DNA from: Macrostomum lignano
Taxonomy: Eukaryota
NCBI GenBank assembly: GCA_002269645.1
Contig: NIVC01002065.1
Span: forward strand, 143,744-207,743
DNA: 64,000 bases
Direction: 5' to 3'
In this document: positions 29,501-63,365 of the stretch, piece by piece
Layout of the letters: each line of letters starts with the position of its first letter
Position numbering within the stretch: position 1 is the stretch's first letter
The notes under the pieces: model-generated
Seen by the model: only the letters and a program-made list of their open reading frames with translations
The model's database searches: none
What the model was told of the DNA's origin: nothing
Made by a program: the position numbers and the translations under genes

Positions 29501-29639
29501 TCTTTTCCGTCTTTTGTTTGCCTATCCTTCTGCCTGATTGTCTACGTCTGTTTGCCTGTCAATCTTCTCACTCTCCAAATCTACTGTCCCTGCTGTCTTA
29601 GTTGTCAAAACAGCTCGTCACAACCTCCTCCCCATATAG

Positions 29640-29804: not shown

Positions 29805-29975
29805 GTGAGTAGTGAGCAATTATAGCTAATTATATGCTCATCTGTGTACTTTTTTAGACCAGCTCGAAGGAGTTCCCGCCCTGACAATTCCATTTCCAAT
29901 GTGTTGTTTTGTTCGCAGTTAAAGCACTACTCGCAGTAGTAAATCGGTGCAAACCTGTTTGTTTCAAACTTCCAG

Positions 29976-33216: not shown

Positions 33217-33336
33217 GTAAGTGTAACTGGTGTCCTGTTGCTTTGGATAGCTGACTAGCTCGTAGCTAGATAAATAGACTGATTGATCCTTTTTGTATAA
33301 TAACCAAAGCGCAAGCATACTTTTTGTTCTTTTTAG

Positions 33337-40484: not shown

Positions 40485-41335
40485 ACTTGGTGGGCGCCCC
40501 TGTCTCTTAGTGGGCGCCTGTCTCTTGATGAGCGCCCCCTCTCTTGGTGGCGCCCCCTGTCTCTTGATGAGCGAGCGCTCCCTCTCTTAGTGGGCGGGCG
40601 CCCGTGTCTCTTGGTGGGCGCCCCCTGTCTCTTGGTGGGCGCCCCCTGTCTCTTGATGAGCGCTCCCTCTCTAAGTGGGTGGGCGCCCGTGTCTCTTGTT
40701 GGGCGCCCTTGTCTCTTGGTGGGCGCCCCCTGTCTCTTGATGAGCGCCCCCTCTCTTGGTGGGCGCCCTATCTCTTAATGGGTTCCACTGTCTCTTGGTG
40801 GGCGCCCCCTGTCTCTTGATGAGCGCCCCCTCTCTTGGTGGGCGCCCCCTGTCTCTTAATGGGTTCCACTGTCTCTTGGTGGGCGCCCCCTGTCTCTTGA
40901 TGAGCGCCCCCTCTCTTGGTGGGCGCCCTATCTCTTAATGGGTTCCACTGTCTCTTGGTGGGCGCCCCCTGTCTCTTGGTGGGCGCCCCCTGTCTCTTGG
41001 TGGGCGCCCCCTGTCTCTTGGTGGGCGCCCCCTGTCTCTTGGTGGGCGCCCCCTGTCTCTTGATGAGCACTCCCTCTCTAAGTGGGTGGGCGCCCGTGTC
41101 TCTTGTTGGGCGCCCTTGTCTCTTGGTGGGCGCCCCCTGTCTCTTGATGAGCGCCCCCTCTCTTGGTGGGCGCCCCCTGTCTCTTAATGGGTTCCACTGT
41201 CTCTTGGTGGGCGCCCCCTGTCTCTTGATGAGCGCCCCCTCTCTTGGTGGGCGCCCCCTGTCTCTTAATGGGTTCCACTGTCTTTTGGTGGGCGCCCCTA
41301 TCTCTTAGTGGTTTCCACTGTCTCTTGGTGGGTTC
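40485..41335. repeat. 21-bp GC-rich minisatellite (GTCTCTTGGTGGGCGCCCCCT)n with higher-order variants
   Basis: Direct inspection. Confidence 0.93.
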
Positions 41336-46303: not shown

Positions 46304-47164
46304 GTAGGAACGGGGGGCAGTGGGGCCATGCCCCCACTTTTTAAAGTGGGGGGGGGGCAGTAATGGTCTGGCCCCTCCACATTTTAAATGTAAAATGTAG
46401 ACTTCTTGATTAATTTTGGTTTTTGCTGCTTTGCATGAATGCATTTTTTCTGCAGGGCGACAAAACATAGCGCCCGTAGCGCCAAAATGAGTGGCTGCAG
46501 CGCCAAAATGAGTGCCTGCGGCGCCAAAATGAGTGCCTGCCGCGCTAAAATGCGGGCCTGCGGCGCTAAAATGAGTGCCTGCGGCGCTAAAATGAGTGCC
46601 TGCGGCGCTAAAATGTGTGCCTGCGGCGCCAAAATGAGTGCCTGCGGCGCCAAAATGAGTGCCTGCGGCGCTAAAATGAGTGTCTGCGGCGCCAAAATGA
46701 GTGTCTGCGGCGCCAAAATGAGTGCCTGCGGCGCCAAAATGAGTGCCTGCGGCGCTAAAATGAGTGCCTGCGGCGCCAAAATGAGTGCCTGCGACGCTAA
46801 AATGAGTGTCTGCAGCGCCAAAATGAGTGCCTGCCGCGCTAAAATGCGGGCCTGCGGCGCTAGAATGAGTGCCTGCGGCGCCAAAATGAGTGCCTGCGGC
46901 GCCGAAATGAGTGCCTGCCGCGCTAAAATGCGGGCCTGCGGCGCTAAAATGAGTGCCTGCGGCGCTAAAATGACAAATGAATGCCTGCGGCGCTTTATAA
47001 AATGAGTGCTGACAAGATGGGTTCTGAAAATAATTGGTACATGATTATGTGCATTTTCCATATATTAAAATCTTACTCGACGGGGGCGTTCGCCCTGTGT
47101 CTCCCTAAATCCGTCACTGAACCTTTCCCTCCCTCCCAGTTTTTGAAACGTCCCTACGCCTATG
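46304..47164. mobile_element. hAT-like MITE carrying a 21-bp array (GCCTGCGGCGCCAAAATGAGT)n at ~46480-46995
   Basis: Perfect 8-bp TSD CTGCATGC (46296-46303, 47165-47172); ends GTAGGAACG / CGTCCCTACGCCTATG. Confidence 0.8.
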
Positions 47165-48580: not shown

Positions 48581-49010
48581 ATAACAACAACAACAAAATA
48601 CGCGACCCCGCATGCACAGTCAACAGTTAGAGCAGGGCGCGTCAGATGGCGCGCCGCAGAGCCTGGGAGCGAACAAAGTCAGCTCGGCAGTGTCGGGCGC
48701 CCCAGCGTCGCACAGCAGGCAGTCCACGTATCGACGGGTTCGGGCCTAACCCCGCCTGAACGGACCCCGCAAGGTGAGCAGCAGGACGTCCTGAGCAGGT
48801 TGGGGGCAGTAGCCCTCGGCCCGGATCACGTGGCTCGCCAGTTGAAGTCGCCGCCGGCGCAGGATGGTGAACGGGCGCTGCAGCTTGGCCCGATCGGTCC
48901 CGACGCCTCGGTCCCGACGCCTCGGTCCCGACGCCTCGGTCCCGACGCCTCGGTCCCGACGCTCTCGTTAGCTCGAAAGGCCGCATGGAGCAGCCCTGAG
49001 TGCGCCGAGT
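48581..49010 (-). mobile_element. 5'-truncated RTE-like LINE 3' end with (TTG)n tail and internal 14-bp repeats
   Basis: Minus strand reads TILRRRRLQLASHVIRAEGYCPQP..LLLTLRGPFRRG.ARTRRYVDCLL, then TTGTTGTTGTT. Confidence 0.7.
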
Positions 49011-49856
49011 TGATGTGTTCCTTGTTACCCGACCGACTTTCGGTAATCAAAGAACAATCACTTCTAGCTCTGTAGCTAGGCAACCCAGTAAGTCAATGAA
49101 GGTATTTATTACCTTGAGTACTGATCAGTTGATCTCTTCCTGAGCGTTGTTCTCGCTAGTAGATCTTAGGGCGCCTCTCGTCGGTGTCTGGTCCGGTCCT
49201 CTTTGTCCTCTCTGACTTCTGGCCGGCCGGTATCTGTAGTTCGGACCAATCGGAAGCTTCGAATTAACAATGGGATCCCTGCGCCAAACTGCGGTATAGT
49301 ATAAGCCTACTCCTTCTAGCAGTGCCTCTTCGCACTCTAGGAATAGCTCCGGAGACCACTGATAGCCTTCTAAGATCTATCAGGGGCAGTCCTTCTGGAG
49401 ACTGCAACCAGTGGAGTCTAAACAGACTCTCTAAAGTTGTGATTATTGAATGGCAATAGGCAAAAAGAAAGTGAAAAATTGTGCAAAGTGAAGCTGTAAG
49501 GCAGTCAAACATTCAGGATTCAGCAAAGTTAAATAGTTATACTGCTTTTTTTCTTGGAAGATCCGAATCGATTCTGGTTCTGGAATTGGTTAATGTGAAA
49601 AGCTCCAATGAATCGTTATCGTAATTACGTTTTGATCGTAGGTCCACGAGTTTAAAAATTTATTAAAACACGCACGTGCAGCTAGAAATTGTTTGTAAGC
49701 GTGCATGCCCGCTGCTGCACTACACTTACACTGTAAGTAGACCTTAGACAGGGTGTAGGTCGAAGACGAATAGACGATAAATAAGTTACATAGCCTAATC
49801 ACGCATTCATAATTATTTGTTTTTATCCTTATTCCATTCCATATCGGCATATGACA
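49011..49856 (-). mobile_element. Older LTR related to the intact gypsy element, inverted orientation; right boundary inferred
   Basis: 49011-49430 is the reverse complement homologue of the LTR 3' half (...GGAACACATCA end). The candidate TG start at 49856 gives ~846 bp. The U3 part is not alignable by eye. Confidence 0.7.
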
Positions 49857-51638
49857 TTGTTTCAATTGATTTGATTTTGATCCTTTGAGTTTGACTAGGC
49901 ACTAGGCAGGGCCTATAACTTTGGGAGTCATCTATTTTTATAGGCTATTATTATTAATTTGCCCAATAAAATGTGTATCTCTATGTCTTGATCTGCTTTT
50001 ATTAATTTGTCTATTATAAAACTTTTAAATGAAATCTAAAAAGAAAAATGCTAGGATAGGCCTAGGCACTAGGCAGGCAGGTGCAGGCCTTGCTTGTTTA
50101 ATTTATATTTAGTTTTAAATAAGGCCTTTTTTTATTAAACTAATAAATTATTTAAAGACAATGGCTATATCTAAAATTCTACATTTAAGAATTAAGGGCT
50201 AAGAGGGGCATGGTATCTGCCTATGGCATGGGCTATGATATGATATGTCAACAAATCTGAATACATATTAATTGATATTAGACTTAGGCGTTAGGGGTTA
50301 GATAGGATTGAAGTCATCAATTAGGATTGGAAATATTTTTCTCAGGTTTGGGATCAGGATTAGGAATCAGAGTCAGGTTTTTTTGTTTATTTTATAGGCC
50401 TAGCTTTGTTACTTTTAACATAACTTTTTTATTTGTAAGATAAAGATATTTTCTATTTGTTATTTTAATTCTTTTTTTGTTTCTTTTTTGCTACTTTTGA
50501 GGTAGGGGATTTCAAAATAGATTGCTACACGCCAATACTGCAGCCCTATAGTCAGGAGCATGGCACTCTTGTGCCAAAACAAATCCAATCAAAAAAGTTC
50601 GCTTGTACCATGTGCCAGAACTATTCCTATCAAAAAGCTTGCTTGTACTATGCTGGAACTTTTAAAAAATTACAAAAAATGCAAAAACCGGTATTTTCCA
50701 TTGGAAAAATTCTAGTAAAACTTGTATTTGAATCTGTTTAATAGAAAATGCAATGTTAACATATATTAATTAAAAATCATCAATATACAACAAACAAAAG
50801 TGCTAGGCCCCATAAAAAGAAATTACATGCTAATTTTCTGTTTGTAAAAATATTGTCTTGCTGAAAGTTTTTGGCTTGCAATAATTTGCACCATTTTTTG
50901 TCTTGCGTAATATAGTATTGCACTGAATTTTTCCCCTTGTCTACTGTTGTGCCAGAATGTGCCAGAATGGGTGATGCATGTCCAACCCCCTTTTGCACCA
51001 GAATTTTCCATGAAAAGACCATTTTCCTTACTATGGCTATAGCTATTGGGTTGGCAATTTGTCAATATTTGAATTTACAGACTTAAAGCCAGAAAACTTA
51101 AAGCAATATATATGTTTGAATCTGTATTGTTTATTCCATCATCTGCTATAGGTTCTCAATTCCAGGGGAAGGATAATAAAAATATTGTAGCCAAGAGGTC
51201 ATTCTTCTATATGTATATAGTATACCATTTTTTGAATTTGCCAAAATGTTTTAATACTTTGCCAAAATATTACTTTTGTGATTCACTGAAACATTAATTT
51301 GCCAAAACATCATATAGCCACTATAGTTCATAGATCCATATAGAGTTGAACAGAGTTGAACAAATACTATTAAGATCAGATCAAAAGATAAAACATGATA
51401 GAATAGATATAAAGTTTTGTAACCAATGAAGATTATTATAATGAGTATAAGTTAAAACAGAATGCATTCAAGTAATCACTAATTCTATAAATTTAGAATC
51501 AAAAGACCTATTTCCAATTTTCATTGTTAAGGTTAGGATCCCAAGAATATGGGATCAGGATTCAAATCCTATTTGACCTCTAGTATATATTTGGTAGTAT
51601 CATATACATTAATCTGATACTATAAATATACTAGCTAC

Positions 51639-52502
51639 TGTAGAGTGTTCTACCTCCCGTTAAAAAAGGAAAAAAGAAGATAATCGTATAATACTACTAT
51701 AAGTAAGTAAGTACACGCATGTGCGCCTAAGCTTTGAATGAATCACGCTACCAGAAAAAGATGTTACCAGAATAATACGCCATGAGCCATTTTCCCCTTT
51801 TAGCGCAACACGTGAATTGTCATGATACTATTTTGGATCAAAAACTTGTCTATAAATACAAGCGATCTGAAGCGGTACCGGAGCCATTCTCCCCACGGAA
51901 GAGGAGCGCTCCGAAGAGGAAGCCTTAGGAGGACTTCCTGATCTACCAAGTCAATCGAGACTCGGTCGAGTTGTTGCGGTAAGCCTTCCTTATTTGCGCC
52001 CGTTGTGTTAGAGACGTCTCGCTCAAGTCTATTGAGACTTGAGTCTAATTGAGTCTGTTGAGACTCTTGAGTCTGTTTAGACTCCATTGGTTGCAGTCTC
52101 CAGAAGGACTGCCCCTGATAGATCTTAGAGGACTATCAGTGGTTTCCGGAGCTATACCTAGAGTGCATAGAGGCACTGCTAGAAGAAGGAGGCTTAATTT
52201 AGACCGCAGTTTGGCGCAGGGTACCCATTGTTGCTACGAGGCCTCTGATTGGTCCTGACGGAAGATACCGGCCGGAAGAACTTATCGGAAGTACAAGAGG
52301 AACCAGGACCAGAGCAACTGAAGAATCAAGGCGCCTGATCTACGAGATCTACTGACAAGTTCCTAGCGAGAACTACTCAAGAAATTCAAATCCGGATTAA
52401 AGGTAATTGAATACCTTCGTTTGACTTACTGGGTTGCCTAGCTGTTGAGCTAGAAGTGATTGTTCCTTGATTATCGAAAGTCGGGTAATAAGGAACACAT
52501 CA
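51639..52502 (+). repeat. 5' LTR (864 bp), TATAAATA at 51851-51858
   Basis: Starts TGTAGAG, ends ACATCA; matches 61388-62250 except one visible 1-bp indel. Confidence 0.96.
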
Positions 52503-52515: not shown

Positions 52516-53216
52516 CCCTCTCGGCACTACTCAAACCTTGAGCAATAGCCTGGCCAAGCTATTGTAAAGTGACGACAGAGCGACTTCATTAATTTTGCGC
52601 GCACGTGTTAGAGTTAACACTTTTTAAGTCCGTTACGTTTTGAAACTCGAGTAAAATTTGGTGTACAGGTTTGAGCACCTGTCAAATTTGAGTACAGTTT
52701 GAGCACGCGTGTTAAAATTTTGTTTTGACGAGCTCGAGCAAGTGTGAGTTTAAAACAAAACCGAAATTAACTTCGTCGGTACACTGAAAACAAACCAAAA
52801 ATAAAAAAATCGTCGACGCAAACAAACAAAAAATAACTGAAACATTTTGCCGGCACAAAAACTAAAACAAAACCGAAATTAATTGAAACTTCGTGGAGAG
52901 CAGAGTTAATTGACAAAAGAGAGAGAGTCAAAGAAGAGAAGAAAGACTTTGCAAAGCAAGAAGACAAGTCCACTTCAACTTGAAGATACACTTTGCGGGA
53001 CGCCGCATAAGTGCGAAATCAGCAAGCGAACAGAACAAGTTCATTTGAGGACAACCAGTGGCAGCAAGCCACACCGCATCCGAGGCCAGCGAATAACAAA
53101 TCGACACCACAAGGCAATTCGTTACAGTCGAGGTTTATTCCGAGGCAAACACCACACTGGACGATCCGTTACAAATCGATCCAGATCTTGAACTACCGTT
53201 CTACCCTATCAACAAC

Positions 53217-54923
53217 ATGGCGCGGCGCAATCCAACGGTACACAGAGACATCAAAGAAACGGTCGGTACTTTCTCGATGGAGAAAGATTTTAACACATTT
53301 GTCGACCATTTTGACCTGGTATGTAGGGAATACAACCTACAAAATCCAGAGAAGGCACAGCTGCTGCCACCTCTTCTCCAAGGTACTGCGCGAGAAATTT
53401 ACGGCAAGCTGGATGCGGCAACACAGCAAAATTATCCAGCACTAATCATTCAACTGCGCGCGCATTTCAACCGTTGCGGCACAAACAGATCAGTGCTGCT
53501 GCACAAGTTGCATAACAGAAGGATGCAAGCAACAGAATCCTTCCTCGCCTTTGTGGACGATATCCGCCAGATAATTAAGGCACTGCATCAGCCACCGCTG
53601 CAAGCTGCGGACCAACCACCACTGGGAGCGGCAGAATTGGCCGCCAGAGAAAGACAACGATTGATGGATCGTGAACAAAACCTCATCCTGCACGTAATAA
53701 ACAACGCACAGCCGTCACTTCGGGATAGACTTTTGCGTGAAAATATCGAAACCGAAGAAGACCTTTTGCGTTGCGGAATGCAATGGGAAGCCAGTGCCCC
53801 ATTAATGACGACAGGCAACAATGAAGTGCAGAAACTGACGCAGCAACTAAACAAGTTAATGCAGCACCAGACAGCTGCTATCGCCGAACAAAAAAGACGA
53901 AATGAACAAGCCTCAGCCAGATGTTACTACTGCGGACAAGAAGGACATTATCAGATTAATTGTCCTCATTGGTCAACAAGATACGACAAGCCGCGACAGA
54001 TATTCAACAATCAGAAGCCGCAGAAACCATGGCAGCAATATCAAAATCGCCAACAACAAGGCATAAGACGCTTCGGAAATGATAGACGCTTCGGAAATAA
54101 TGACCGCTCCGGAAATGATGGCCGCTTCGGAAACGAAGGCCGCTTCAGAAGTAATGGCTACAGGCCACGCAACGTCAGATACACACAAAGACAGCCGACG
54201 CAAGCAATGCCACGATACGCGAATGCCATCACGTACACACCGGAAAATGAACAGCAAGAACAGCAAGTGTTCACAATTGACGACTTGGAAATGGACTTCA
54301 CAGTCCCGGAACTTGACATCAGCTTGATCGAAAAGAAGACGACGCACGAGGACAACACTGACAACACAGAAGAGACGAATGAAACCGAAATGATCAAATT
54401 AAAAGAGACCACCGGAGACAGCAGAGAAAACAGGAAGAAAGTAAATCACAAGACAAGGGAGGAGGCGGAGAGCGACATCGGCAACGAAGAAAAGATGAAA
54501 ACCGGCGAAGAAAACAACTATGAATCGACAACAGTGGATGACGACAAAACGAGCATGAAAGACAAAGAAATGAAAGAAGAAGAAGAATGTAGAAGTTACG
54601 GCAACGACCACGACTGCGAGGTGCGTGATGACACGAACGACTACCAAGCCGAAAGAGGAATGCAGGAAGAACCGAGAGCGGAGAATCTAAGTTCCGACAG
54701 CGATCAAGGCTACGAAATACAATGGAAAGATGAAGAAATGGAAAAAGAACAGGTGAAAGAAAAGCCGAGTTCCGACAGCGACGAATGCTACGAGATCCGA
54801 TACAAACGAAATGGTGAAGCCTATATTCAAACGGTCGACTACAAGACAGAGAAAAGATACCAAACGCAATGGAGTGAAACAACGGAAACATCGGAAGAAG
54901 CGCAGACGAAGATAATGAAATAA
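53217..54923 (+). CDS. gag: Gag (capsid-like, CCHC knuckle, long acidic C-terminal extension)
   Basis: F..FVDHFDL..LLQGTAREIY..LRAHF..LHNRRMQATESFLAFVDDI; CYYCGQEGHYQINC at ~53922-53963. Confidence 0.92.
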   Translation: MARRNPTVHRDIKETVGTFSMEKDFNTFVDHFDLVCREYNLQNPEKAQLLPPLLQGTAREIYGKLDAATQQNYPALIIQLRAHFNRCGTNRSVLLHKLHNRRMQATESFLAFVDDIRQIIKALHQPPLQAADQPPLGAAELAARERQRLMDREQNLILHVINNAQPSLRDRLLRENIETEEDLLRCGMQWEASAPLMTTGNNEVQKLTQQLNKLMQHQTAAIAEQKRRNEQASARCYYCGQEGHYQINCPHWSTRYDKPRQIFNNQKPQKPWQQYQNRQQQGIRRFGNDRRFGNNDRSGNDGRFGNEGRFRSNGYRPRNVRYTQRQPTQAMPRYANAITYTPENEQQEQQVFTIDDLEMDFTVPELDISLIEKKTTHEDNTDNTEETNETEMIKLKETTGDSRENRKKVNHKTREEAESDIGNEEKMKTGEENNYESTTVDDDKTSMKDKEMKEEEECRSYGNDHDCEVRDDTNDYQAERGMQEEPRAENLSSDSDQGYEIQWKDEEMEKEQVKEKPSSDSDECYEIRYKRNGEAYIQTVDYKTEKRYQTQWSETTETSEEAQTKIMK

Positions 54924-54967: not shown

Positions 54968-57900
54968 ATGGAACAACCGAAAGAATATGATGCGGACATG
55001 GAAGATAACGAATGGCGATCGCAGCCAATGCCAGCAAGGACAACGGCAAAATCCAAGAAGTGGAAAAACTGGCTATTCTGGATCATCGTGATACTACTGA
55101 TAGCAGTAGTCGCCAAAGCAACGGCAACGGAAAAGCCAATGATTTGTCCAACGGATGCGCATATCCAACCGATGATCTACAAGATACCAACCGACATCAA
55201 ATGCAGTTACTTCAAGACAAACCAGACAAAACCAAAGAAGATTACACTCGATCTCTACAAGGCTAACATCAAGAAGCATCGACAACACGGGATAGTATGC
55301 TTCAGAGACAAGCACCTGGTGGAAAAAGTTTGGCGCGGACAATGGAACCGGATCCGATTTAAACAACATGAGCTACATGTGTCGCACGCGGAATGCCTAC
55401 AATGGAATCAAACACTATTTTCAAAGGATGGTGAACTGGAACCAGATGAGAAGGTCGGCAACGCACAGCTGTTCAGAACAAAGAATTCAGCCAACGGTCG
55501 ATATATTCACTTCTTCGGAAAATGGAAAGAATATATGGCACGCAACAGCTACTTGATCAGAAATATTCCATTCTACTACAATCCGTACGAGAAAATGGAA
55601 TCGTTACAGCTGCAACTAAGCGAATGTCGATACAGTGAAGGATGGTGTCCAACGCCGATTCTACGGAAGGAAGAACTACACAGTCTACCACTGAGTCCAA
55701 CATATCATCAAGACTATCGATGGCAGATTGAGCACAGAGCACAATCACACTATGAGGAACCGTACAAATCACGACAATACTTCTTCGCGTGGGAAGTTGA
55801 GCCGGAAATTGACTGCAAGCTTCAAAAGTATCACACAGTTGAAGGAGGACTACTGTCAAATACGTTTTTGGCAAAGTCAGGAGACTTGGCACTGACGTTT
55901 CAAAAGAAACCAGTCGAGCAAAAACTGAAATGCAAGGATACAGACAAGACACTATTCATCTCGGAACAAGAGATACCAGTCTACGTAAAGGATGAAGACA
56001 AACAAACCTTCTTGGCAATCATCAATGGAACGTATCAGCAACAAGAAAAACAGAATAGAAGACGACGTGACATCGAACGTCCCAAACTGGTGTCAAACCG
56101 GCTGTTGTCAGCAAAGATAACGGCTTTGGATCACAATCTACACAACCAGTTAAACCACTTGCATCGAACACTGGTCCAGCTAACTTGCAAAATGCACGCA
56201 ATCAACTTAAATTATGCCAGACAAAACTACTATGTCAACCCTACGATGACTTTTCGTAAAATCACCGGAATGACGAACGTTTTGGCAGTTCCAATATACG
56301 AGCATCTGTTGATATACAAGTGCACGCCGATACAGCACTTTAACATCTTGCCGTCAAACACGTCAACAACCTGCTACGATAAGCCAAGGATTGAAGCGTT
56401 CTACGAAGGAAAACGAATTCAGGGATTCTTGGACACGGTACACAACATCATCGTTGGCACCGCAATACCGAGACCTTGCACCACGGCAGTAAACTACTAT
56501 CAACTGGACAATGCACTACACGTCATCAAAACAACTGGAACGACAGCAAACGTCACAGAACCGGAAGTAATCGTCGACGAAAACTACGACATGGAGGATT
56601 TGAAAATCCGATTCAACAGAACGAAGTATACGCCATTCGCCGATATCCAACTTGACGAGATAACACCAGGATGGACGATCAACGACTTCTTGCAAGCGTT
56701 CATCACCCAACGCAAGATGATTCACCAGCTGTTCACAAGAAAGGACAAAGGAACCGGGACAGGAAGATTTCCCGTCCTTGTTTCAATGGACAGCGCCATC
56801 AAATCATTTTGGACAAATAGCTTCTGGGAGCTGCTCAATGGAAGAGGCAGTCTCTATCAAGGATTCATCTTCTACGGTGCTTGCATTGTGTGGATTGTCA
56901 CGGCAATCTTCATCATTTCATCGATCGTACGGTGCTTCAGTCAAACTTGTCCAAGAGCTAAGAAGACAGTGAATGCCATAATGCAAAGAACGACAACGGA
57001 AAGCGACAACAGTTTAGAACTAACAGAAACTGCACATTGTGAGGTTCAAGGGCAACCGACACTAGCAACGCGGCTATATCCATCGATTCCGACAACACCA
57101 ACGGCACCAAGGATACAACCACCCAACTATCAAGCAGAACAGCACGAGCCAAAATGGCCGGAAAACTACGTCTGTACGCTACACGCCGAGATTGGCAAAG
57201 CAATGGCTCAGGTCATTGTCAACAACTTGCCATGTCGAGCACTACTGGATTCAGGCAGCTCGATCACAGTCATCTCGCAACAATTATGCAACAAGCTACG
57301 ACTCGCGGTACGACCAGCAGCAATCGCAGTTGCAGGAGCAGGAGGACATTCACTCAACATCCTAGGAAAAGCAGATATCGACTTGAAAATTGCTAATAAA
57401 CAGCTGACGGTCCCGACGTACATCATCGACAGACTACCAAACCAAGACGTCATCGTTGGAATCGACACGTTCAAGCAGCTTCAACTACCATTGACCTTCG
57501 ACTTCAACAAGCAAACGTTTAGGATCGACACGGTGGAGCAACCGCTGATCAACCAGATTCGAGTACTACCGAAAGTAACTCTGCAGCAAGATGTCATTAT
57601 CCAGCCTGAAAGCGCATGCTGGGTCAGAGCGAAAACGACCAGCGCGGCAGATGAAGCAATGATATTTGATCCACACAGGAGAGTCACGGCAAAACATCAA
57701 ATCATGATGCCTACGGCACTAGTGCTGGTTGCAAAGGATAAGCAACTGCCAGTACAAATCTTCAACCCGAACACAGAAACGGTTCATCTACGACAAGGAA
57801 TGTGCATCGGTCATCTCAACACCCAAGCATCGGTTATGCTGATTGAACAAGCGACTCCACGACTAACAGAGGAAGAATTTCAAAAGAAGATCAATTTGGA

Positions 57901-60712
57901 TGACAGCCCGATTACGGAACAGCAAAAGAGGAAAGTTCGACAGCTGTTGTGGAAGTACAACGAAGCCTTCTGCCATCATGATTACGACATCGGACGAGCC
58001 AAGGACATCAAACAGGAAATCAAACTTCTGCCGCACACGGAACCAATTCAGTGCAAGCCGTACCCGATCGCCAAGCATCTGCAACAACACTTTGACGAAA
58101 TCATCGATAAAATGCTAAAGCACGGCATCATCAGCAAAGCTATTTCGGCTTACTCCTCACCGTGCCTACTGGTACAGAAGAAGGAGACAAACGAAAGACG
58201 ACTCGTATGCGACTTCAGACTGTTGAACAAGTACATACCGACGGATCAGCAAAGCCTACCGAAGATCTCCGAACTACTAGCAAAGCTCAACACGGCAAAA
58301 TTGTTCACGGTGTTCGACCTACGTCATGGATTTTGGCAAATTGAAATCGAGAAAGAGTCACGACAGTACACGGCTTTCAAAACCTACAATGGACAAGTAT
58401 ACGAGTACAATCGATCGCCGATGGGACTTAGCAACAGCCCAGCAACGATGAGTCGACTAACAGCATACATGCTAGCAGGATGCACGAACCTGCTGCACTA
58501 TGTCGACGACATTTTAGCCTACGGAGAGGATTTCGAGCGACTCTACGAAGCTACGGAGAAGGCCCTAGCGCTCATTCAACGCCAAGGTCTGAAGCTACAA
58601 CCAACTAAATGCAAATTCTTCCGAGACAACGTGCGTTACCTGGGACATCAGGTGACAGCCAAAGGAATCTCACCGGACCCAGACAACGTGGAAAAGGTGA
58701 AGAAGTTTCCTACGCCAACCAGTATAACGAAGGTCCAATCATTCCTTGGACTTGCGCAATACTTCAGGAAGTTCTTACCTAACTTCGCAAAGACAGCAAA
58801 GCCACTGTACGACCTGCTCAAGTTCGACAAATGGAAGCAAGACAACTGGACACAGAGACAACAGGAAAGTTTCGACGAAATCAAACGACAGCTGACATCA
58901 GACGCACTGCTACAGCATCCGGACTTCGACAAGCCCTTCATCATCGAGACAGACGCCTCAGGAACGGGACTCGGAGCAGTCCTACTACAGGAAACCGAGG
59001 ACAAGAAGGAACGACCTATTGCTTACGTCAGTCGAGCACTCAAACCAAATGAGACAAAGTGGTCAGCTACGGAACGAGAGCTACTAGGAGTCTTGTTCGC
59101 CCTGCGACAGTTTCATTACTACATCTATGGTTCTCCAATACAGACGATAGTACGCACGGATCATGCACCATTGACCTACGTCGTAACTACAAAAGGACAG
59201 ACCAACAACCGACTCATCAGAATGACACTCAAGATCCAGGATTACAACTACAAACTCGTCTACAAACCAGGAATTACCAACAAAGCCGCGGACGCCCTGT
59301 CAAGAGCCTATGAAGTCAACGCCATTCATCCAATCCCTAACATCAAGGAGTTGGTGGATGAAACCGAGCGCGACAACTTCTACCAAGCGGTTAAAGACGA
59401 CGACAAGAACATCAAACTCAGTCCCATGGAACGAAAATTCCTACGCAAGCAACGACAACACCTAACAATCAATAAGTCACGGCTCTACTGGATGAGCGAC
59501 AATAAACCCAAGATCTACATACCATATTCGTTTCGGCAAGCAATTCTCAACGAGCTACACGACAACCCACTCGCTGGACACCTGTCGGCAGCAAAGACCA
59601 TCGCGAGAGTGGAACAATACTACTTTTGGCCAACTATGTACGGCGACATCAAGCAGTATTGCAACAACTGCCATTCATGTGCTGCATCAAAGACAGGACG
59701 ACGACAGAAACCGCAGCTACAGTCCATTCCGAAGTCGACTACAATGGACTGTCTAAGCATCGACATCACCGGACCGCTACCACCGAGCTGTCTCCAGGGC
59801 ATCGCCTACACCTACATTCTAACCGCCTTGGATATCTTCTCGAAGTTTGCTATCGCCATACCGATACCGGACATCACAGCTCAGACAGTGGCAATGAGTT
59901 TCTTCAACGAAATCATTTGCAAGTACGGCACGCCGAAGAACCTCACATCGGACAACGGATCGCAGTTTACATCGCAACTGTTTCAGCAAGTCGTAAGGAT
60001 TCTCAACATTACGCAGATCTACACATCGACCTACAATCCGAAGGCAAACATGGTTGAACGGTTTCACCGCAACCTGCACGAGATGATTACACATTTCGCG
60101 CACCAACAGCCGGAAGACTGGATCATCTACCTGCAATCTGTAACAATGGCCTACAACAGCGCTATTCATCGATCAACGGACAATACGCCATTCTTCCTAA
60201 TGTTTGGACGAGACTTCCAACCGCCGAATCTGCTCGCACAGCAATTGCTACCATCGCAGTACGTGGAAGTACCGACTTCCATTCAGAAATTCGTCACGCA
60301 ACTACACCTCGCATGGAAGATCGCCAAGCACAACATTGACAACCAGGTGGCTCTGACCACCGGCAACGACGCGAGATCGACAACCCTGACGGCCGGCGAC
60401 ATCGTCTACCTACACTACCCGCCACAGCAGACGCATAAACATGCACAGAAGTACAAAGGACCCTATCGAGTGGTCCAACTAACGTCACCAACAACGGCAC
60501 GCCTGGCTAATGTACAAGATCCACATCAGCACCAGTTCTACGTACACATTCATCGACTAAAGAAGATCAACACTGACACAGCGACGTTTCTACCGACATT
60601 AGACAACGCTGATCGCACGCGTTCAACGAACCGCCACATCGCGACGAAGCACGAGGAGACTCAAACGACAGATGTGAGCCAGCCACATGGCTACAACCTA
60701 CGACCACGCTAG
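54968..60712 (+). CDS. pol: Env-Pol fusion polyprotein, 1914 aa: Env-like glycoprotein then protease, RT, RNase H, integrase
   Basis: LLDSGS (57245), LRHGFWQI, YVDD (58499-58510), ETDASGTGLGAVL, HHCC + DITGP..DNGSQF..ERFHRNL, GPY; N-terminal ~660 aa has two hydrophobic segments and 12 ectodomain Cys. Confidence 0.95.
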   Translation: MEQPKEYDADMEDNEWRSQPMPARTTAKSKKWKNWLFWIIVILLIAVVAKATATEKPMICPTDAHIQPMIYKIPTDIKCSYFKTNQTKPKKITLDLYKANIKKHRQHGIVCFRDKHLVEKVWRGQWNRIRFKQHELHVSHAECLQWNQTLFSKDGELEPDEKVGNAQLFRTKNSANGRYIHFFGKWKEYMARNSYLIRNIPFYYNPYEKMESLQLQLSECRYSEGWCPTPILRKEELHSLPLSPTYHQDYRWQIEHRAQSHYEEPYKSRQYFFAWEVEPEIDCKLQKYHTVEGGLLSNTFLAKSGDLALTFQKKPVEQKLKCKDTDKTLFISEQEIPVYVKDEDKQTFLAIINGTYQQQEKQNRRRRDIERPKLVSNRLLSAKITALDHNLHNQLNHLHRTLVQLTCKMHAINLNYARQNYYVNPTMTFRKITGMTNVLAVPIYEHLLIYKCTPIQHFNILPSNTSTTCYDKPRIEAFYEGKRIQGFLDTVHNIIVGTAIPRPCTTAVNYYQLDNALHVIKTTGTTANVTEPEVIVDENYDMEDLKIRFNRTKYTPFADIQLDEITPGWTINDFLQAFITQRKMIHQLFTRKDKGTGTGRFPVLVSMDSAIKSFWTNSFWELLNGRGSLYQGFIFYGACIVWIVTAIFIISSIVRCFSQTCPRAKKTVNAIMQRTTTESDNSLELTETAHCEVQGQPTLATRLYPSIPTTPTAPRIQPPNYQAEQHEPKWPENYVCTLHAEIGKAMAQVIVNNLPCRALLDSGSSITVISQQLCNKLRLAVRPAAIAVAGAGGHSLNILGKADIDLKIANKQLTVPTYIIDRLPNQDVIVGIDTFKQLQLPLTFDFNKQTFRIDTVEQPLINQIRVLPKVTLQQDVIIQPESACWVRAKTTSAADEAMIFDPHRRVTAKHQIMMPTALVLVAKDKQLPVQIFNPNTETVHLRQGMCIGHLNTQASVMLIEQATPRLTEEEFQKKINLDDSPITEQQKRKVRQLLWKYNEAFCHHDYDIGRAKDIKQEIKLLPHTEPIQCKPYPIAKHLQQHFDEIIDKMLKHGIISKAISAYSSPCLLVQKKETNERRLVCDFRLLNKYIPTDQQSLPKISELLAKLNTAKLFTVFDLRHGFWQIEIEKESRQYTAFKTYNGQVYEYNRSPMGLSNSPATMSRLTAYMLAGCTNLLHYVDDILAYGEDFERLYEATEKALALIQRQGLKLQPTKCKFFRDNVRYLGHQVTAKGISPDPDNVEKVKKFPTPTSITKVQSFLGLAQYFRKFLPNFAKTAKPLYDLLKFDKWKQDNWTQRQQESFDEIKRQLTSDALLQHPDFDKPFIIETDASGTGLGAVLLQETEDKKERPIAYVSRALKPNETKWSATERELLGVLFALRQFHYYIYGSPIQTIVRTDHAPLTYVVTTKGQTNNRLIRMTLKIQDYNYKLVYKPGITNKAADALSRAYEVNAIHPIPNIKELVDETERDNFYQAVKDDDKNIKLSPMERKFLRKQRQHLTINKSRLYWMSDNKPKIYIPYSFRQAILNELHDNPLAGHLSAAKTIARVEQYYFWPTMYGDIKQYCNNCHSCAASKTGRRQKPQLQSIPKSTTMDCLSIDITGPLPPSCLQGIAYTYILTALDIFSKFAIAIPIPDITAQTVAMSFFNEIICKYGTPKNLTSDNGSQFTSQLFQQVVRILNITQIYTSTYNPKANMVERFHRNLHEMITHFAHQQPEDWIIYLQSVTMAYNSAIHRSTDNTPFFLMFGRDFQPPNLLAQQLLPSQYVEVPTSIQKFVTQLHLAWKIAKHNIDNQVALTTGNDARSTTLTAGDIVYLHYPPQQTHKHAQKYKGPYRVVQLTSPTTARLANVQDPHQHQFYVHIHRLKKINTDTATFLPTLDNADRTRSTNRHIATKHEETQTTDVSQPHGYNLRPR
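55070..56940 (+). other. env: Env-like (gB/class III fusogen-like) segment of the polyprotein
   Basis: Signal anchor WLFWIIVILLIAVVAKA, furin RRRR (56057-56068), six N-glycosylation sequons, TM GFIFYGACIVWIVTAIFIISSIV. Confidence 0.85.
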
Positions 60713-60832
60713 AGTTTAGAGAACAACCCCGTGTAGTGACCGGGATAAAGAATAGCACTACAGCTTCGCAAGCTTGTCGTAAAAGGCGACTAATCCGAGC
60801 GACACAAAGACAGCGACAAATTGACGACAATT

Positions 60833-61207
60833 ATGGGCAACGCACTGTCAAAACAGGCGCCCCAGCCTCAGCAGCTATATGACTGCCCGATATGTTTAAC
60901 TGATGACTTGGCTGTCAAGCCACCGACTATTTGCATCAACGAACATAAAGTTTGCGGACAATGTTTAAGCGATTCACATTATATTCAGCCATGGCAGAAT
61001 TGTCCCCTCTGTAGAGATAGTTTGCGACAATGTGCCTATTGTTATTCTTGGCGCACGTTTCAATATTGTAACCACCAACATTTTATTTGCATGCACTGTT
61101 TGAAGCAAACCGCTAGTAGGGGCGTTATAGGATGCCCCTTATGTAATAGTATGCCGCGAGACTGCACGTTTCGAAAGTGGTGTCGGATCAAACCTGATGC
61201 CACTTGA
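60833..61207 (+). CDS. Accessory ORF3: 124-aa double RING-finger protein with N-myristoylation motif
   Basis: MGNALSK; C-x2-C-x12-C-x3-H-x2-C-x2-C-x12-C-x2-C followed by C-x2-C-x8-C-x3-H-x2-C-x2-C-x11-C-x2-C. Confidence 0.82.
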   Translation: MGNALSKQAPQPQQLYDCPICLTDDLAVKPPTICINEHKVCGQCLSDSHYIQPWQNCPLCRDSLRQCAYCYSWRTFQYCNHQHFICMHCLKQTASRGVIGCPLCNSMPRDCTFRKWCRIKPDAT

Positions 61208-61372
61208 TGTCTACGCGATATTCGAGTTTTGACCGCAATATGTACTGAAAAGTTTTTAGAGTTTTGACCAAACCCTCGCTTCACTAGACGCGCACAAAAT
61301 CAATTGTTTATTTCCTATATTAACTGATCACCACAGAATTTTATTGTTAAAACTCGGGACGAGTTTTTTCGT

Positions 61373-61387
61373 AAAAAAGGGAGATTT
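61373..61387 (+). promoter_or_regulatory. Polypurine tract
   Basis: AAAAAAGGGAGA-TTT immediately before the 3' LTR, preceded by CTCGGGACGAGTTTTTT. Confidence 0.8.
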
Positions 61388-62250
61388 TGTAGAGTGTTCT
61401 ACCTCCCGTTAAAAAAGGAAAAAAGAAGATAATCGTATAATACTACTATAAGTAAGTAAGTACACGCATGTGCGCCTAAGCTTTGAATGAATCACGCTAC
61501 CAGAAAAAGATGTTACCAGAATAATACGCCATGAGCCATTTTCCCCTTTTAGCGCAACACGTGAATTGTCATGATACTATTTTGGATCAAAAACTTGTCT
61601 ATAAATACAAGCGATCTGAAGCGGTACCGGAGCCATTCTCCCCACGGAAGAGGAGCGCTCCGAAGAGGAAGCCTTAGGAGGACTTCCTGATCTACCAAGT
61701 CAATCGAGACTCGGTCGAGTTGTTGCGGTAAGCCTTCCTTATTTGCGCCGTTGTGTTAGAGACGTCTCGCTCAAGTCTATTGAGACTTGAGTCTAATTGA
61801 GTCTGTTGAGACTCTTGAGTCTGTTTAGACTCCATTGGTTGCAGTCTCCAGAAGGACTGCCCCTGATAGATCTTAGAGGACTATCAGTGGTTTCCGGAGC
61901 TATACCTAGAGTGCATAGAGGCACTGCTAGAAGAAGGAGGCTTAATTTAGACCGCAGTTTGGCGCAGGGTACCCATTGTTGCTACGAGGCCTCTGATTGG
62001 TCCTGACGGAAGATACCGGCCGGAAGAACTTATCGGAAGTACAAGAGGAACCAGGACCAGAGCAACTGAAGAATCAAGGCGCCTGATCTACGAGATCTAC
62101 TGACAAGTTCCTAGCGAGAACTACTCAAGAAATTCAAATCCGGATTAAAGGTAATTGAATACCTTCGTTTGACTTACTGGGTTGCCTAGCTGTTGAGCTA
62201 GAAGTGATTGTTCCTTGATTATCGAAAGTCGGGTAATAAGGAACACATCA
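61388..62250 (+). repeat. 3' LTR (863 bp)
   Basis: Near-identical to the 5' LTR. Confidence 0.96.
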
Positions 62251-63365
62251 CTACTAGCTAGGGTTAGGCCCACAATATAATATGAGCATAAGAAAGTTAA
62301 GCCATTATCCCAAGGATTTTGATACCTTACCTTTCTAAGGCCCTAGAGTCCTAGGTATAGCTACTATAGATTTTCAAATGGATTTTACACTATATAGCCT
62401 AAGACCTAAATAGGCCCATTGATGTAACCGCCCTTGTCGCCAGTCCACTCCTATTGAGAGACGAACGCTTGGCTAGAGGGGGCAATGACCGTAGGCTGCC
62501 TATGACCGGGCAATGACCTGACGGACCTCCAGCACCAGACTGTCCCGCCCACATGATTAGTAGCTTTGGTAGCGCTTCGTGACCAGAGGGCCAAGGACCC
62601 ACATGGACCCCACCTGTAGCCAAGGTGCAATAGTTGGTCACTCGGTCATGGTATGACGAGTGGCTGCCACCACTCTATGTGACCTGGTGCACCTGGATCT
62701 TGCTACCAGACCTCTTGAGGCTAGAGCCCCGCCTGGATTGGTTACCAGGGGATTTAGGCTAACAGGGGAGACGCATGCAGCCGAGTACAGGGACTCTGCT
62801 TGGGGCATGATCGGGAACTCTGGGCTCAATCCTGGAGGATTTCTCAGCAGGGGATCCTTGTGGCTGTGAGCGAGGCTGACTTGCGACTTTGATTACTAAG
62901 AGGTAGTATGAGGTGAACATGTACTGTCTCTAGTTTTAGATTGCTCAGGGCAAAGAGGCGCGTCAGCATGGGGTTGCAACCTTCCTACTGCCATTCTGTG
63001 CCAAGACTCGCTAATCCTCTACTGCACGCACGCACGGCCCCGCAGCCCGCACTCACAGGCGAGCTTTGCACGGGAGAGGCCATTAGCTTACCCAAACTTC
63101 TCTATGCTTTGCCACCGGGAGAAAGGCTTAGCAAGCCATGAGTGAAATGATGGTGAAAGAGTGAATAATGATGAGGTTAGTTAATAGTTAATAATTAGGC
63201 CCTTAGGCAAATAATCAGGCAATTAGGCGGCTTCACTATTGAGTAAAAATACAGCAAAAGGTACGGTATCACAACTGGCTCAGCTCTCTAATCAGACCAT
63301 GGAAAAATAGGCAAACTCCGGATAAGCAAAGGCAATTAGAGCACAAATCAGTAACAGGAACTTAC

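What the first reader, a model, noticed from the sequence alone, without database searches (positions are those of the whole stretch)
60833..61207. Third ORF encodes a putatively myristoylated tandem-RING protein
Seen: between the integrase stop and the PPT, a 124-aa ORF begins MGNALSK and contains two consecutive C3HC4-pattern fingers. Known: G2/S6/K7 is a favourable N-myristoyltransferase context, RING-HC domains are typically E3 ligases, arenavirus Z is a myristoylated RING matrix protein, and lentiviral Nef is a myristoylated 3' accessory protein. This Gag starts directly with capsid-like sequence and has no myristoylation signal. Inference: ORF3 is either a stand-in matrix protein or a membrane-targeted E3 that counters host restriction or aids ubiquitin/ESCRT budding.
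Basis: partly seen in the sequence, partly recalled or inferred. Interest (0 to 1): 0.85.

Follow-up and report, generated by a model that had tools for sequence, protein, structure and literature searches.

The report
Tandem-RING accessory gene in flatworm retroelement
A young retrovirus-like element in the flatworm Macrostomum lignano carries, after its integrase, a small gene kept by natural selection that encodes two adjacent RING zinc fingers, a gene type I found no report of in LTR retroelements and which probably works through the host ubiquitin system.

Summary
Window 60833-61207 is a 124-aa ORF starting MGNALSK, with two back-to-back C3HC4 fingers. It lies between the pol stop (60712) and the polypurine tract (61374-61385) of an intact, very young LTR element (LTRs 863/864 identical, 4-bp target duplication) of Macrostomum lignano.

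It is a real gene. A full HMMER scan found a small family (best E 1.3e-24) in which all 16 zinc ligands are invariant. One relative sits at the same place behind an integrase 64% identical. Of four other M. lignano copies, two are identical, one is open and one is broken. dN/dS is 0.10-0.16, close to the env-like domain (0.13). An AlphaFold model (pLDDT 83) gives two RING folds.

A RING E3-type accessory protein is the best reading. Public gene models imply a splice donor in the LTR that feeds spliced mRNAs.

The myristoylation motif occurs in all five M. lignano copies but in none of the six more distant relatives, so a Z-like matrix role is weakly supported. This copy is a short form that lacks the relatives' ~100-aa C-terminal domain. 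I found no RING ORF3 reported in LTR retroelements.

The parts
51639..52502 (+). 5' LTR (864 bp, TG...CA); TATA-like box near 51852. Target-site duplication CTAC at 51635-51638 and 62251-62254.
   Evidence: the two LTRs differ by a single 1-nt indel.
51979..51984 (+). Inferred 5' splice donor GTAAGC inside the LTR; the leader exon ends at 51978. The same site in the 3' LTR is 61728-61733.
   Evidence: similarity of the M. lignano gene models P0023 (two junctions) and P0002 (one junction) to the LTR stops exactly at this site and continues directly in a RING ORF or in gag. The donor is present in the LTRs of L007-L009, and in variant form in L006. No ATG lies in the leader.
53183..53184 (+). 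Inferred splice acceptor AG, 32 nt upstream of the gag ATG.
   Evidence: gene model P0002 resumes at 53184/53185 with 100% identity over 45 aa.
53217..54923 (+). gag (568 aa, one CCHC knuckle, no Gly2).
54968..60712 (+). Single 1914-aa ORF. An env-like type-I glycoprotein (signal/anchor, furin-like RRRR, C-terminal TM; aa 1 to about 700) is fused in frame to PR-RT-RNaseH-IN.
   Evidence: Pfam RVT_1, RT_RNaseH, rve and others; weak Monjiviricetes_fusion, E 3.6e-5. The GAG-ENV-POL order is described for flatworm errantiviruses in PMC13524379.
57098..57130 (+). PTAP and PPNY late-domain-type motifs, 3 residues apart, in the linker between the env-like TM segment and the protease (aa 711-721 of the ORF).
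   Evidence: also present in P0001 and in L006's ORF.
60727..60796 (+). Conserved non-coding block just after the pol stop; candidate acceptor/branch-point region or RNA element for ORF3 expression.
   Evidence: conserved with L006 and with the distant L002, where the flanking coding DNA is far less alike; two small hairpins, one with two compensatory changes (only 3 sequences).
60833..61207 (+). ORF3, 124 aa: N-terminal arm with an N-myristoylation consensus, two RING-HC fingers, and a short basic tail.
60836..60853 (+). Codons 2-7 (GNALSK): N-myristoylation consensus.
   Evidence: pattern match. Conserved in L006-L009; absent from P0020-P0026 and P0023.
60884..61012 (+). RING finger 1 (aa 18-60), ending in the family-invariant CPxCR.
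   Evidence: profile against TRIM21 RING E 4.1e-5, SIAH1 3.8e-4, RING2 about 1e-3; (helix 42-50).
61031..61144 (+). RING finger 2 (aa 67-104).
   Evidence: profile against BRE1 RING E 3e-4; strands 75-77 and 84-86, helix 87-95.
61208..61373 (+). Non-coding stretch between ORF3 and the polypurine tract. It is too short (56 codons, with two further in-frame stops) to hold the relatives' C-terminal domain.
61374..61385 (+). Polypurine tract.
61388..62250 (+). 3' LTR.

Best explanation
ORF3 is a real accessory gene, maintained by selection, of a Macrostomum lineage of GAG-ENV-POL Ty3/gypsy (errantivirus-like) retroelements.

**What the protein is.** It is little more than two adjacent RING-HC zinc fingers that look like an internal duplication.
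- Finger 1 keeps the features that catalytic RINGs use to hold and activate an E2~ubiquitin conjugate. These are an aliphatic residue inside the first CxxC, a Pro before the last Cys and an Arg right after it. I take these criteria from the general RING literature.
- Finger 2 lacks them and probably serves as a structural partner.

**Most likely mechanism (inferred).**
- The element makes a spliced subgenomic mRNA from the LTR donor at 51978|51979 to an acceptor in the conserved spacer 60713-60832. On that mRNA the ORF3 AUG is the first AUG.
- The protein acts as a small RING E3 ligase or E2 adaptor. It ubiquitinates either a host factor that restrains the element, or the element's own membrane-anchored Env-Pol/Gag assembly, whose linker carries PTAP and PPNY.
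- In the M. lignano subfamilies a 17-residue N-terminal arm with an N-myristoylation consensus would bring it to membranes.
- The copy in the window is a short form without the ~100-aa C-terminal domain of the more distant relatives.

**Shown:** gene reality, position, selection, RING sequence and predicted fold, family distribution.

**Inferred:** splicing to ORF3, myristoylation, E3 activity, substrates.
For: - **Family.** There are 6 hits in 1.84 billion representatives, the best at E 1.3e-24. All 16 ligands, plus P58 and R61, are invariant at 26-46% overall identity.
- **Same position in a distant element.** In L002 the relative starts 119 nt after the stop of an integrase 64% identical to the window's. 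A conserved spacer block lies between them.
- **Other M. lignano insertions (GCA_002269645.1).** ORF3 is identical in L008 and L009 and open in L007.
- **Selection.** Omega is 0.10 against L007 (9 synonymous, 4 non-synonymous; p 1.5e-4). It is 0.16 against L006 (22 and 21; p 2e-6). For comparison, the env-like part gives 0.13 and PR-IN gives 0.04.
- **RING identity.** The family profile matches solved RING E3 domains of TRIM21, SIAH1, RING2 and BRE1 at E 4e-5 to 1e-3.
- **Predicted fold.** The AlphaFold2 model built on the family alignment has pLDDT 83.4 and pTM 0.68, with the expected helix after each third ligand pair. Foldseek returns almost only RING domains, at probability up to 0.99-1.0 and TM to isolated RINGs of 0.56-0.65.
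- **Splicing.** Three gene-model junctions end exactly at the LTR GTAAG. There is no upstream ATG, and the start context is good.
- **Myristoylation motif.** It matches the consensus and is kept in 5 of 5 M. lignano copies, across dS of about 0.7.
Against: - All Pfam RING hits are below the gathering score.
- Two of the five AlphaFold models were poor (pLDDT about 46).
- No tool here tests zinc binding, E2 binding or ligase activity.
- The aliphatic residue in finger 1 is not kept in P0023.
- The window copy lacks the C-terminal domain that five relatives share, so it may have lost substrate recognition.
- L006 has an intact 1914-aa env-pol but a broken ORF3: one premature stop, two ligand substitutions, and a 3' third that cannot be aligned. 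L007 has one ligand substituted. ORF3 is therefore not indispensable in cis.
- The Gly2 motif is absent from all six distant relatives.
- The splice evidence comes from predicted gene models of sister elements, not from reads. The ORF3 acceptor is not mapped.
Confidence: 0.6

Rival explanations
1. Z-like matrix protein. ORF3 is a non-enzymatic, myristoylated RING scaffold that lines the membrane and drives assembly and budding in place of a Gag matrix domain.
For: - The N-myristoylation consensus is conserved in all five M. lignano copies.
- Gag has no Gly2.
- The element has an env-like membrane protein and late-domain motifs.
- Single fingers superpose on the Lassa Z RING (5i72: TM to target 0.63-0.65, rmsd about 2 A over 48 residues).
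Against: - Gly2 is absent in all six distant relatives, which start 4-8 residues before the first Cys.
- Sequence similarity to Z is not significant (E 0.08-0.16).
- ORF3 has two RINGs and no PTAP, PPxY or YPxL motif.
- L006 keeps env-pol intact with ORF3 broken.
- There is only one basic residue near the N-terminus to serve as a second membrane signal (sequence).
Confidence: 0.12
2. Decaying passenger. ORF3 is a once-captured RING gene that no longer serves this subfamily. It is carried along and is eroding from its 3' end.
For: - The window form is 124 aa, against 206-229 aa in relatives.
- The in-frame continuation to the polypurine tract holds two more stops.
- ORF length varies among copies: 70, 124 and 144 aa.
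- There are ligand substitutions in L006 and L007.
- L006 has an intact env-pol but a broken ORF3.
Against: - Omega is 0.10-0.16 over the RING part, including between the two subfamilies.
- Three independent insertions carry an identical ORF.
- The start, the spacer block and all 16 ligands are intact in the window.
- A second short form of 130 aa (P0021) exists elsewhere.
Confidence: 0.15
3. Regulatory zinc-finger protein. The two fingers bind nucleic acid or a transcription or RNA-processing factor (a transactivator or export adaptor), without ubiquitin transfer.
For: - Some viral RING proteins are also transactivators (general knowledge).
- The tail after finger 2 is basic, and the protein has a net positive charge (13 K+R against 8 D+E).
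- A conserved RNA-like block lies next to the gene.
Against: - All significant matches are to E3 RING domains.
- The invariant CPxCR ending is typical of E2-activating RINGs (general knowledge).
- No nucleic-acid-binding family matched.
Confidence: 0.1
4. Chance ORF with a fortuitous Cys/His pattern.
For: The ORF is small, and Pfam hits are sub-threshold.
Against: There are homologues at E 1.3e-24 with all ligands invariant, synteny behind the integrase, and omega of 0.10-0.16.
Confidence: 0.01

Closest known systems
Arenavirus Z protein
   Same: It is a small protein with an N-terminal Met-Gly myristoylation consensus and a RING-HC fold. Single ORF3 fingers superpose on Lassa Z (5i72).
   Different: Z has one RING and C-terminal late-domain motifs. 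ORF3 has two RINGs and no such motif. Sequence similarity is not significant. Gly2 is not a family trait of ORF3. The genome type is different.
Cellular RING-HC E3 ligases of the SIAH/Sina, TRIM, RING1B and BRE1 type
   Same: Ligand order and spacing match, as does the CPxCR ending. The profile matches solved RING domains at E 4e-5 to 1e-3. The closest Pfam model in several family members is Sina_RING.
   Different: Those proteins have one RING plus substrate-binding or oligomerisation domains. ORF3 is two RINGs 6 residues apart with almost nothing else. No whole-length structural match was found (best was the RING1B-BMI1 fusion, TM 0.30).
RING E3 proteins of large DNA viruses (herpesvirus ICP0, baculovirus IE2/PE38/IAP, white spot syndrome virus and giant-virus RING proteins)
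   Same: These are virus-encoded RING domains, thought to be used against host defences. Foldseek hits in the viral library are of this kind.
   Different: They are large multidomain proteins of DNA viruses with a single RING. There is no detectable sequence relationship beyond the RING fold, and no relative of ORF3 in IMG/VR.
Lentiviral Nef, and retroviral accessory genes in general
   Same: It is a small 3' accessory ORF before the 3' LTR, with a myristoylation consensus and presumed translation from a spliced mRNA that starts at an LTR or leader donor.
   Different: There is no RING in Nef and no homology. As far as I know, retroviral accessory proteins recruit host E3 ligases rather than being RING proteins themselves. 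ORF3 does not overlap the LTR.
Extra ORF3s captured by LTR retrotransposons (bdelloid rotifers: env-like, GDSL esterase, DEDDy exonuclease; PMC5408684)
   Same: It is an additional ORF downstream of pol. That paper states that such ORF3s are typically expressed from spliced messages.
   Different: No RING, zinc or ubiquitin-related ORF3 is mentioned there, or in three other literature searches.
GAG-ENV-POL errantiviruses with gB-type Env of Platyhelminthes, Nematoda and Bryozoa (PMC13524379)
   Same: This is the host element's architecture: gag, then env, then pol.
   Different: The paper's main text has no occurrence of RING, zinc finger, accessory or myristoyl. The post-pol gene described here is not part of that description.

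Membership tests
RING-HC (C3HC4) zinc finger | Eight ligands in the order C-C-C-H-C-C-C-C, with classical spacing. | tested here: met
   both fingers match. The first loop of finger 2 is 8 residues, one below the classical minimum. All 16 ligands are invariant in the family.
RING-HC (C3HC4) zinc finger | Passes the curated profile of the family (Pfam gathering score). | tested here: not met
   zf-RING_2 scores 18.2 bits against 27.3, and zf-C3HC4 16.7 against 21. Relatives are also sub-threshold. The family profile does reach solved RING domains at E 4e-5.
RING-HC (C3HC4) zinc finger | Cross-brace fold binding two zinc ions per finger. | tested here: inconclusive
   The AlphaFold2 model (pLDDT 83.4) and Foldseek give RING folds for each finger. 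This is only a prediction, and two of the five models were poor. Zinc content cannot be tested here.
RING-type E3 ubiquitin ligase | Binds an E2 and stimulates ubiquitin transfer. | not testable with these tools
   There are only sequence hints: CPIC in finger 1 and the invariant CPxCR.
RBR (RING-between-RING) ligase | An IBR domain between two RINGs, and a catalytic Cys in RING2. | tested here: not met
   The fingers are 6 residues apart. There was no IBR hit in Pfam.
Arenavirus Z-like matrix protein | Gly2 myristoylation signal. | tested here: met
   The consensus is present and conserved in 5 of 5 M. lignano copies. It is absent from the six distant relatives. The modification itself cannot be tested here.
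Arenavirus Z-like matrix protein | Single central RING followed by late-domain motifs. | tested here: not met
   ORF3 has two RINGs and no PTAP, PPxY or YPxL.
Arenavirus Z-like matrix protein | Detectable homology to Z. | tested here: not met
   The profile against Z chains gives E 0.08-0.24.
Retroelement accessory gene | Lies inside the element, between pol and the PPT/3' LTR, at the same place in related elements. | tested here: met
   window; L002; L006-L009.
Retroelement accessory gene | Maintained by purifying selection across copies. | tested here: met
   Omega is 0.10 and 0.16, with a significant excess of synonymous changes. The ORF is open in 4 of 5 copies and identical in 3.
Retroelement accessory gene | Has its own (spliced) mRNA. 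| tested here: inconclusive
   The donor is inferred from three gene-model junctions in sister elements. No read-level data are available, and the acceptor is unmapped.
N-myristoylated protein | The co-translational modification is actually present. | not testable with these tools
   There is only a pattern match.

The most novel reading that the evidence does not exclude
A retroelement that encodes its own membrane-targeted RING ubiquitin ligase. ORF3 would be made from a spliced subgenomic mRNA and myristoylated. It would sit at the membrane next to the Env-Pol tail, with its PTAP/PPNY motifs. There it would either ubiquitinate the assembly machinery to engage ESCRT or destroy a host restriction factor. 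This would be a self-encoded counterpart of what complex retroviruses, as far as I know, achieve by hijacking host E3 ligases, and a convergent analogue of arenavirus Z.
Probability: 0.25. Interest if true: 0.8.

Novelty: new variant of a known kind. Interest (0 to 1): 0.6.

Why it matters
Extra genes in LTR retroelements are the raw material from which retrovirus-like complexity arises. Known examples are envelope genes and a few enzymes. A selectively maintained RING protein would add ubiquitin-system manipulation to that list.

As far as I know, retroviruses manipulate ubiquitination only through host ligases. This would therefore give a natural case of a transposon-encoded candidate E3.

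It occurs in Macrostomum lignano, a laboratory flatworm with a genome, transcriptomes and transgenesis. Expression, localisation and distribution can therefore be examined directly.

The finding also shows that these GAG-ENV-POL elements probably use an LTR-internal splice donor for several mRNAs. That matters for annotating them and for reading RNA-seq of transposon activity.

Tried and rejected
- **Word-indexed protein search.** ORF3 alone, and then the family alignment, gave no hits. The family was found only by the full HMMER scan.
- **Exact look-ups.** The 124-aa and 128-aa ORF3 and the window's env-pol are not on record. ORF3 is therefore not annotated in public gene sets.
- **Single-sequence AlphaFold.** The model was useless (pLDDT 36).
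- **Residual C-terminal domain after the ORF3 stop.** tblastn extends the alignment in frame. However, the tail alone is not significant against P0020 (125 of 2000 shuffles reach its score) or against a profile of the C-terminal domain (87 of 300 shuffles). I therefore rejected this as evidence.
- **dN/dS against the distant L002.** Synonymous sites are saturated, so the comparison is unusable.
- **Pseudo-dimer of RINGs like RING1B-BMI1.** Foldseek gives only TM 0.30, so this is not supported.
- **The next relative by pol (L001, 35% identity).** It has a post-pol ORF, but the ORF is Cys-free and unrelated.
- **Relatives in IMG/VR and JGI metagenomes.** None were found. The alignment was too divergent for pattern scanning.
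- **Rfam on the 3' part of the element.** No match.
- **PDB sequence search with the env-like part.** No match.
- **Counting frame-changing indels from blastn gaps.** This misreported the intact L006 env-pol. I replaced it with ORF and tblastn frame counts.
- **Literature searches for a RING ORF3 in LTR retroelements.** Nothing was found.
Full report
**1. The observation**

- Window 60833-61207 is an ORF of 124 codons that begins MGNALSKQ.
- It contains two consecutive C3HC4 patterns, at aa 18-60 and aa 67-104, separated by six residues.
- Both fingers share the inner motif C-x3-H-x-[VI]-C-x2-C-L and end in CPLC. They look like an internal duplication (read directly from the sequence).
- The ORF lies 120 nt after the stop of the long pol-containing ORF (60710-60712).
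- It ends 166 nt before a polypurine run (61374-61385) that abuts the 3' LTR.
- There is no ATG between the pol stop and the ORF3 ATG. The start context has A at -3 and G at +4.
- Gag starts MARRNP, so it has no Gly2.

**2. The element and its host**

- The LTRs are 51639-52502 and 61388-62250. They differ by one 1-nt indel over 864 bp, begin TG and end CA, and are flanked by a 4-bp duplication CTAC. The insertion is therefore very recent.
- gag (53217-54923) has one CCHC knuckle.
- The next ORF (54968-60712, 1914 aa) starts with about 700 aa of env-like type-I membrane glycoprotein. This part has a signal/anchor, N-glycosylation sites, a furin-like RRRR, a C-terminal TM segment, and a weak Pfam match to a class III fusion glycoprotein family (E 3.6e-5).
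- That ORF continues in frame into protease, RT, RNase H and integrase.
- The host is the flatworm Macrostomum lignano. A UniRef/GenBank entry, 'Retrovirus-related polyprotein' (A0A0M4HFM6 / ALD16272.1), is 99% identical. Several proteins of assembly GCA_002269645.1 are 100% identical to parts of the window's pol.
- The GAG-ENV-POL order with a herpesvirus-gB-type Env has been described for errantiviruses of Platyhelminthes, Nematoda and Bryozoa (PMC13524379). The main text of that paper has no occurrence of RING, zinc finger, accessory or myristoyl.

**3. ORF3 belongs to a real but small protein family**

- Word-indexed searches found nothing.
- The exhaustive HMMER scan of 1.84 billion representatives found six proteins.
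- Five form a family with ORF3:
  - P0020: 206 aa, E 1.3e-24, 45% identity.
  - P0021: 130 aa.
  - P0022: 208 aa.
  - P0025/P0026: 214 and 229 aa.
  - P0023: a 660-aa M. lignano gene model, UniRef A0A1I8G201, that contains two such units.
- The sixth hit (P0024) is a different protein with two separated Sina-type RINGs.
- Family members are only 26-46% identical to each other. Even so, all 16 Cys/His ligands, plus Pro58 and Arg61, are invariant.
- Five units (P0020, P0022, P0025 and both units of P0023) share a further ~100-aa C-terminal domain with no Pfam match. The window's ORF3 and P0021 lack it.

**4. Synteny**

- P0020 lies on a 2-kb Logan contig (L002). It starts 119 nt after the stop of an integrase that is 64% identical to the window's.
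- The spacer between pol and ORF3 holds a block (window 60727-60796) that is conserved between the window, the sister subfamily L006 and the distant L002. The flanking coding DNA is much less alike.
- RNAalifold proposes two small hairpins in this block, one with two compensatory changes. With only three sequences this is anecdotal.
- The other relatives are on short contigs without context.
- The next relative by pol (L001, 35% identity) has an unrelated, Cys-free post-pol ORF. The RING gene therefore marks a narrow lineage.

**5. Other copies in M. lignano**

I read four further insertions from GCA_002269645.1. Their flanks differ from the window's, so they are independent loci.

| Copy | Relation to window | ORF3 state |
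|---|---|---|
| L008 | same subfamily | identical, 124 aa |
| L009 | same subfamily | identical, 124 aa |
| L007 | same subfamily | open, 144 aa (20 codons longer); 12 nucleotide differences clustered in ORF3 (3 in the last 1500 nt of pol); one ligand position substituted |
| L006 | sister subfamily (pol 94% aa identity, LTR about 80% nt) | cut to 70 aa by one premature stop; two ligand substitutions; 3' third not alignable |

- All five copies begin MGNALSKQ.
- env-pol is open in the window and in L006 (1914 aa).
- env-pol shows at least 5 frame changes in L007, 1 in L008 and 2 in L009. In a long-read assembly some of these may be sequencing errors.

**6. Selection**

Nei-Gojobori estimates:

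| Comparison | dN/dS (omega) | Changes | p (excess synonymous) |
|---|---|---|---|
| ORF3, window vs L007 | 0.10 | 9 synonymous, 4 non-synonymous | 1.5e-4 |
| ORF3, window vs L006 (87 alignable codons) | 0.16 | 22 synonymous, 21 non-synonymous | 2e-6 |
| env-like part, window vs L006 | 0.13 | | |
| PR-IN, window vs L006 | 0.04 | | |

ORF3 has been constrained about as strongly as the env-like domain.
- Against the distant L002, synonymous sites are saturated.

**7. What the protein is**

- Pfam RING models match only below threshold.
- A profile of the family matches solved RING E3 domains:
  - Finger 1 matches TRIM21 (E 4.1e-5), SIAH1 (3.8e-4) and RING2 (about 1e-3).
  - Finger 2 matches BRE1 (3e-4).
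  - Arenavirus Z appears only at E 0.08-0.24.
- AlphaFold2 on ORF3 alone failed (pLDDT 36).
- With the six-sequence family alignment the best model has pLDDT 83.4 and pTM 0.68, with a helix after the third ligand pair of each finger. Two of the five models were poor.
- Foldseek returns almost only RING domains from the PDB and from viral proteins, each covering one finger. Examples are TRIM31, PML, BRE1 and Lassa Z, with TM to target 0.56-0.65.
- There is no whole-length match. The best is a RING1B-BMI1 fusion at TM 0.30.
- Finger 1 has an aliphatic residue inside its first CxxC, and the family-invariant Pro and Arg around its last Cys. From general knowledge of RING-E2 complexes, these are E2-contact and 'linchpin' positions. 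Finger 2 has neither conserved.
- My reading is one catalytic RING and one supporting RING. This is inference.

**8. How it could be expressed**

- Two M. lignano gene models show similarity to the LTR that stops exactly at a GTAAGC inside the LTR. The exon end is 51978 in the 5' LTR and 61727 in the 3' LTR.
- In P0023 the sequence then continues directly into a RING ORF. This happens twice, once with the Met codon immediately after the junction.
- In P0002 it continues 32 nt upstream of the gag ATG, at an AG at 53183-53184.
- The donor is present in the LTRs of L007-L009, and in variant form in L006. The leader has no ATG.
- Whether these models reflect introns or retro-copied spliced RNAs, they point to a shared LTR donor that feeds several mRNAs.
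- ORF3s of LTR retrotransposons are generally said to be expressed from spliced messages (PMC5408684).
- The acceptor for ORF3 in this element is not mapped. The conserved spacer block is the obvious candidate.

**9. The myristoylation idea**

- GNALSK fits the N-myristoylation consensus as I recall it: small uncharged residue at 3, Ser at 6, Lys at 7.
- It is conserved in the five M. lignano copies, across dS of about 0.7.
- The loose pattern occurs in 5 of 95 ATG ORFs of the window.
- None of the six more distant family units has Gly2. They start 4-8 residues before the first Cys.
- The N-terminal arm is thus a lineage-specific addition, not the conserved core of the family.
- ORF3 has no late-domain motif. 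PTAP and PPNY lie three residues apart in the linker between the env-like TM segment and the protease (window 57098-57130).
- This weakens the Z-like matrix reading. It leaves open a membrane-proximal ligase acting near that linker.

**10. Short form**

- The 56 in-frame codons between the ORF3 stop and the polypurine tract contain two further stops. They cannot hold the relatives' C-terminal domain.
- tblastn extends the P0020 alignment into this stretch, but the similarity is not significant on its own.
- The LTRs are nearly identical and three insertions share the same 124-aa ORF. The short form therefore predates these insertions and is compatible with recent transposition.
- Together with L006 (open env-pol, broken ORF3), this says that a complete ORF3 is not required in cis. 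It may be dispensable, or supplied in trans.

**11. Verdict**

- ORF3 is a real gene under purifying selection of a narrow flatworm retroelement lineage. It encodes a tandem RING-HC protein.
- The most likely function is a RING E3-type accessory protein made from a spliced mRNA.
- Myristoylation is plausible for the M. lignano forms only.
- A matrix role is weakly supported.
- I found no report of a RING ORF3 in LTR retroelements. I rate it a new variant of a known kind: an accessory ORF of an LTR retroelement.

Noticed in passing
window 54968-60712: The env-like glycoprotein and PR-RT-RH-IN form one uninterrupted 1914-aa ORF, so Pol would hang on the cytosolic side of a membrane-anchored Env. 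The pol frame is open from 54878 and overlaps the end of gag by 46 nt in the -1 frame. I saw no classical slippery heptamer there. The GAG-ENV-POL order is published (PMC13524379); I did not check whether the in-frame fusion is.
   Followed up: partly
window 57098-57130: PTAP and PPNY late-domain-type motifs lie three residues apart in the linker between the env-like TM segment and the protease. They are also present in P0001 and L006. The region is missing from gene model P0002.
   Followed up: partly
window 51979-51984 and 53183-53184: An LTR-internal GTAAGC donor and an AG 32 nt before the gag ATG are joined in gene model P0002. This implies a 1.2-kb leader intron that removes the rest of the LTR, the primer-binding site and the 5' UTR from a gag mRNA.
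   Followed up: partly
window 60727-60796; L006 11757-11825; L002 1333-1400: A conserved non-coding block follows the pol stop, with two small hairpins. One stem keeps pairing through two compensatory changes between the window and L002. There was no Rfam match.
   Followed up: partly
L007 6392-6826: ORF3 of this copy carries 12 differences in 375 nt, against 3 in the last 1500 nt of pol and 3 in the LTR. This suggests recombination or gene conversion with another subfamily's ORF3.
   Followed up: no
P0023 (UniRef A0A1I8G201, M. lignano): This gene model strings together LTR leader, tandem-RING ORF and C-terminal domain two to three times. It suggests tandem LTR-RING-LTR units, or retro-copied spliced ORF3 mRNAs, of a sister family. 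The genomic locus could not be fetched.
   Followed up: partly
window 49008-49429 (- strand): This LTR fragment is related to the element's LTR (about 80%) but closer to the L006-type LTR (86-92%). It is probably a solo or truncated LTR of the sister subfamily.
   Followed up: partly
window 18395-19730 (+): Two ORF pieces match Pfam EAP30/Vps36 (E 1.6e-13 and 8e-30). These are exons of a host ESCRT-II subunit gene, about 32 kb from the element. The proximity is presumably coincidental.
   Followed up: partly
window 32760-33254 (+): This ORF has an OST-HTH/LOTUS domain (E 2.9e-11), a domain typical of germline RNA-granule proteins. It is followed by a poly-Q-rich ORF at 33324-33986.
   Followed up: no
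window 57-2051 (+): This is a non-LTR retrotransposon fragment with RT and RNase H domains (Pfam RVT_1 E 2.6e-17, RNase_H 3.9e-13). A related piece lies near 8385-8993.
   Followed up: no
window 16312-17065, 19687-20857, 28997-29812, 40916-41308, 46384-47061: Long minisatellite arrays give spurious repetitive ORFs on both strands. GC content swings from 0.28 to 0.55 across the window.
   Followed up: no
window 26080-26886 (-): This is a glycine-rich ORF with a borderline match to the ALK/LTK glycine-rich domain (E 4.3e-5, 24.1 bits against a cutoff of 24.5).
   Followed up: no
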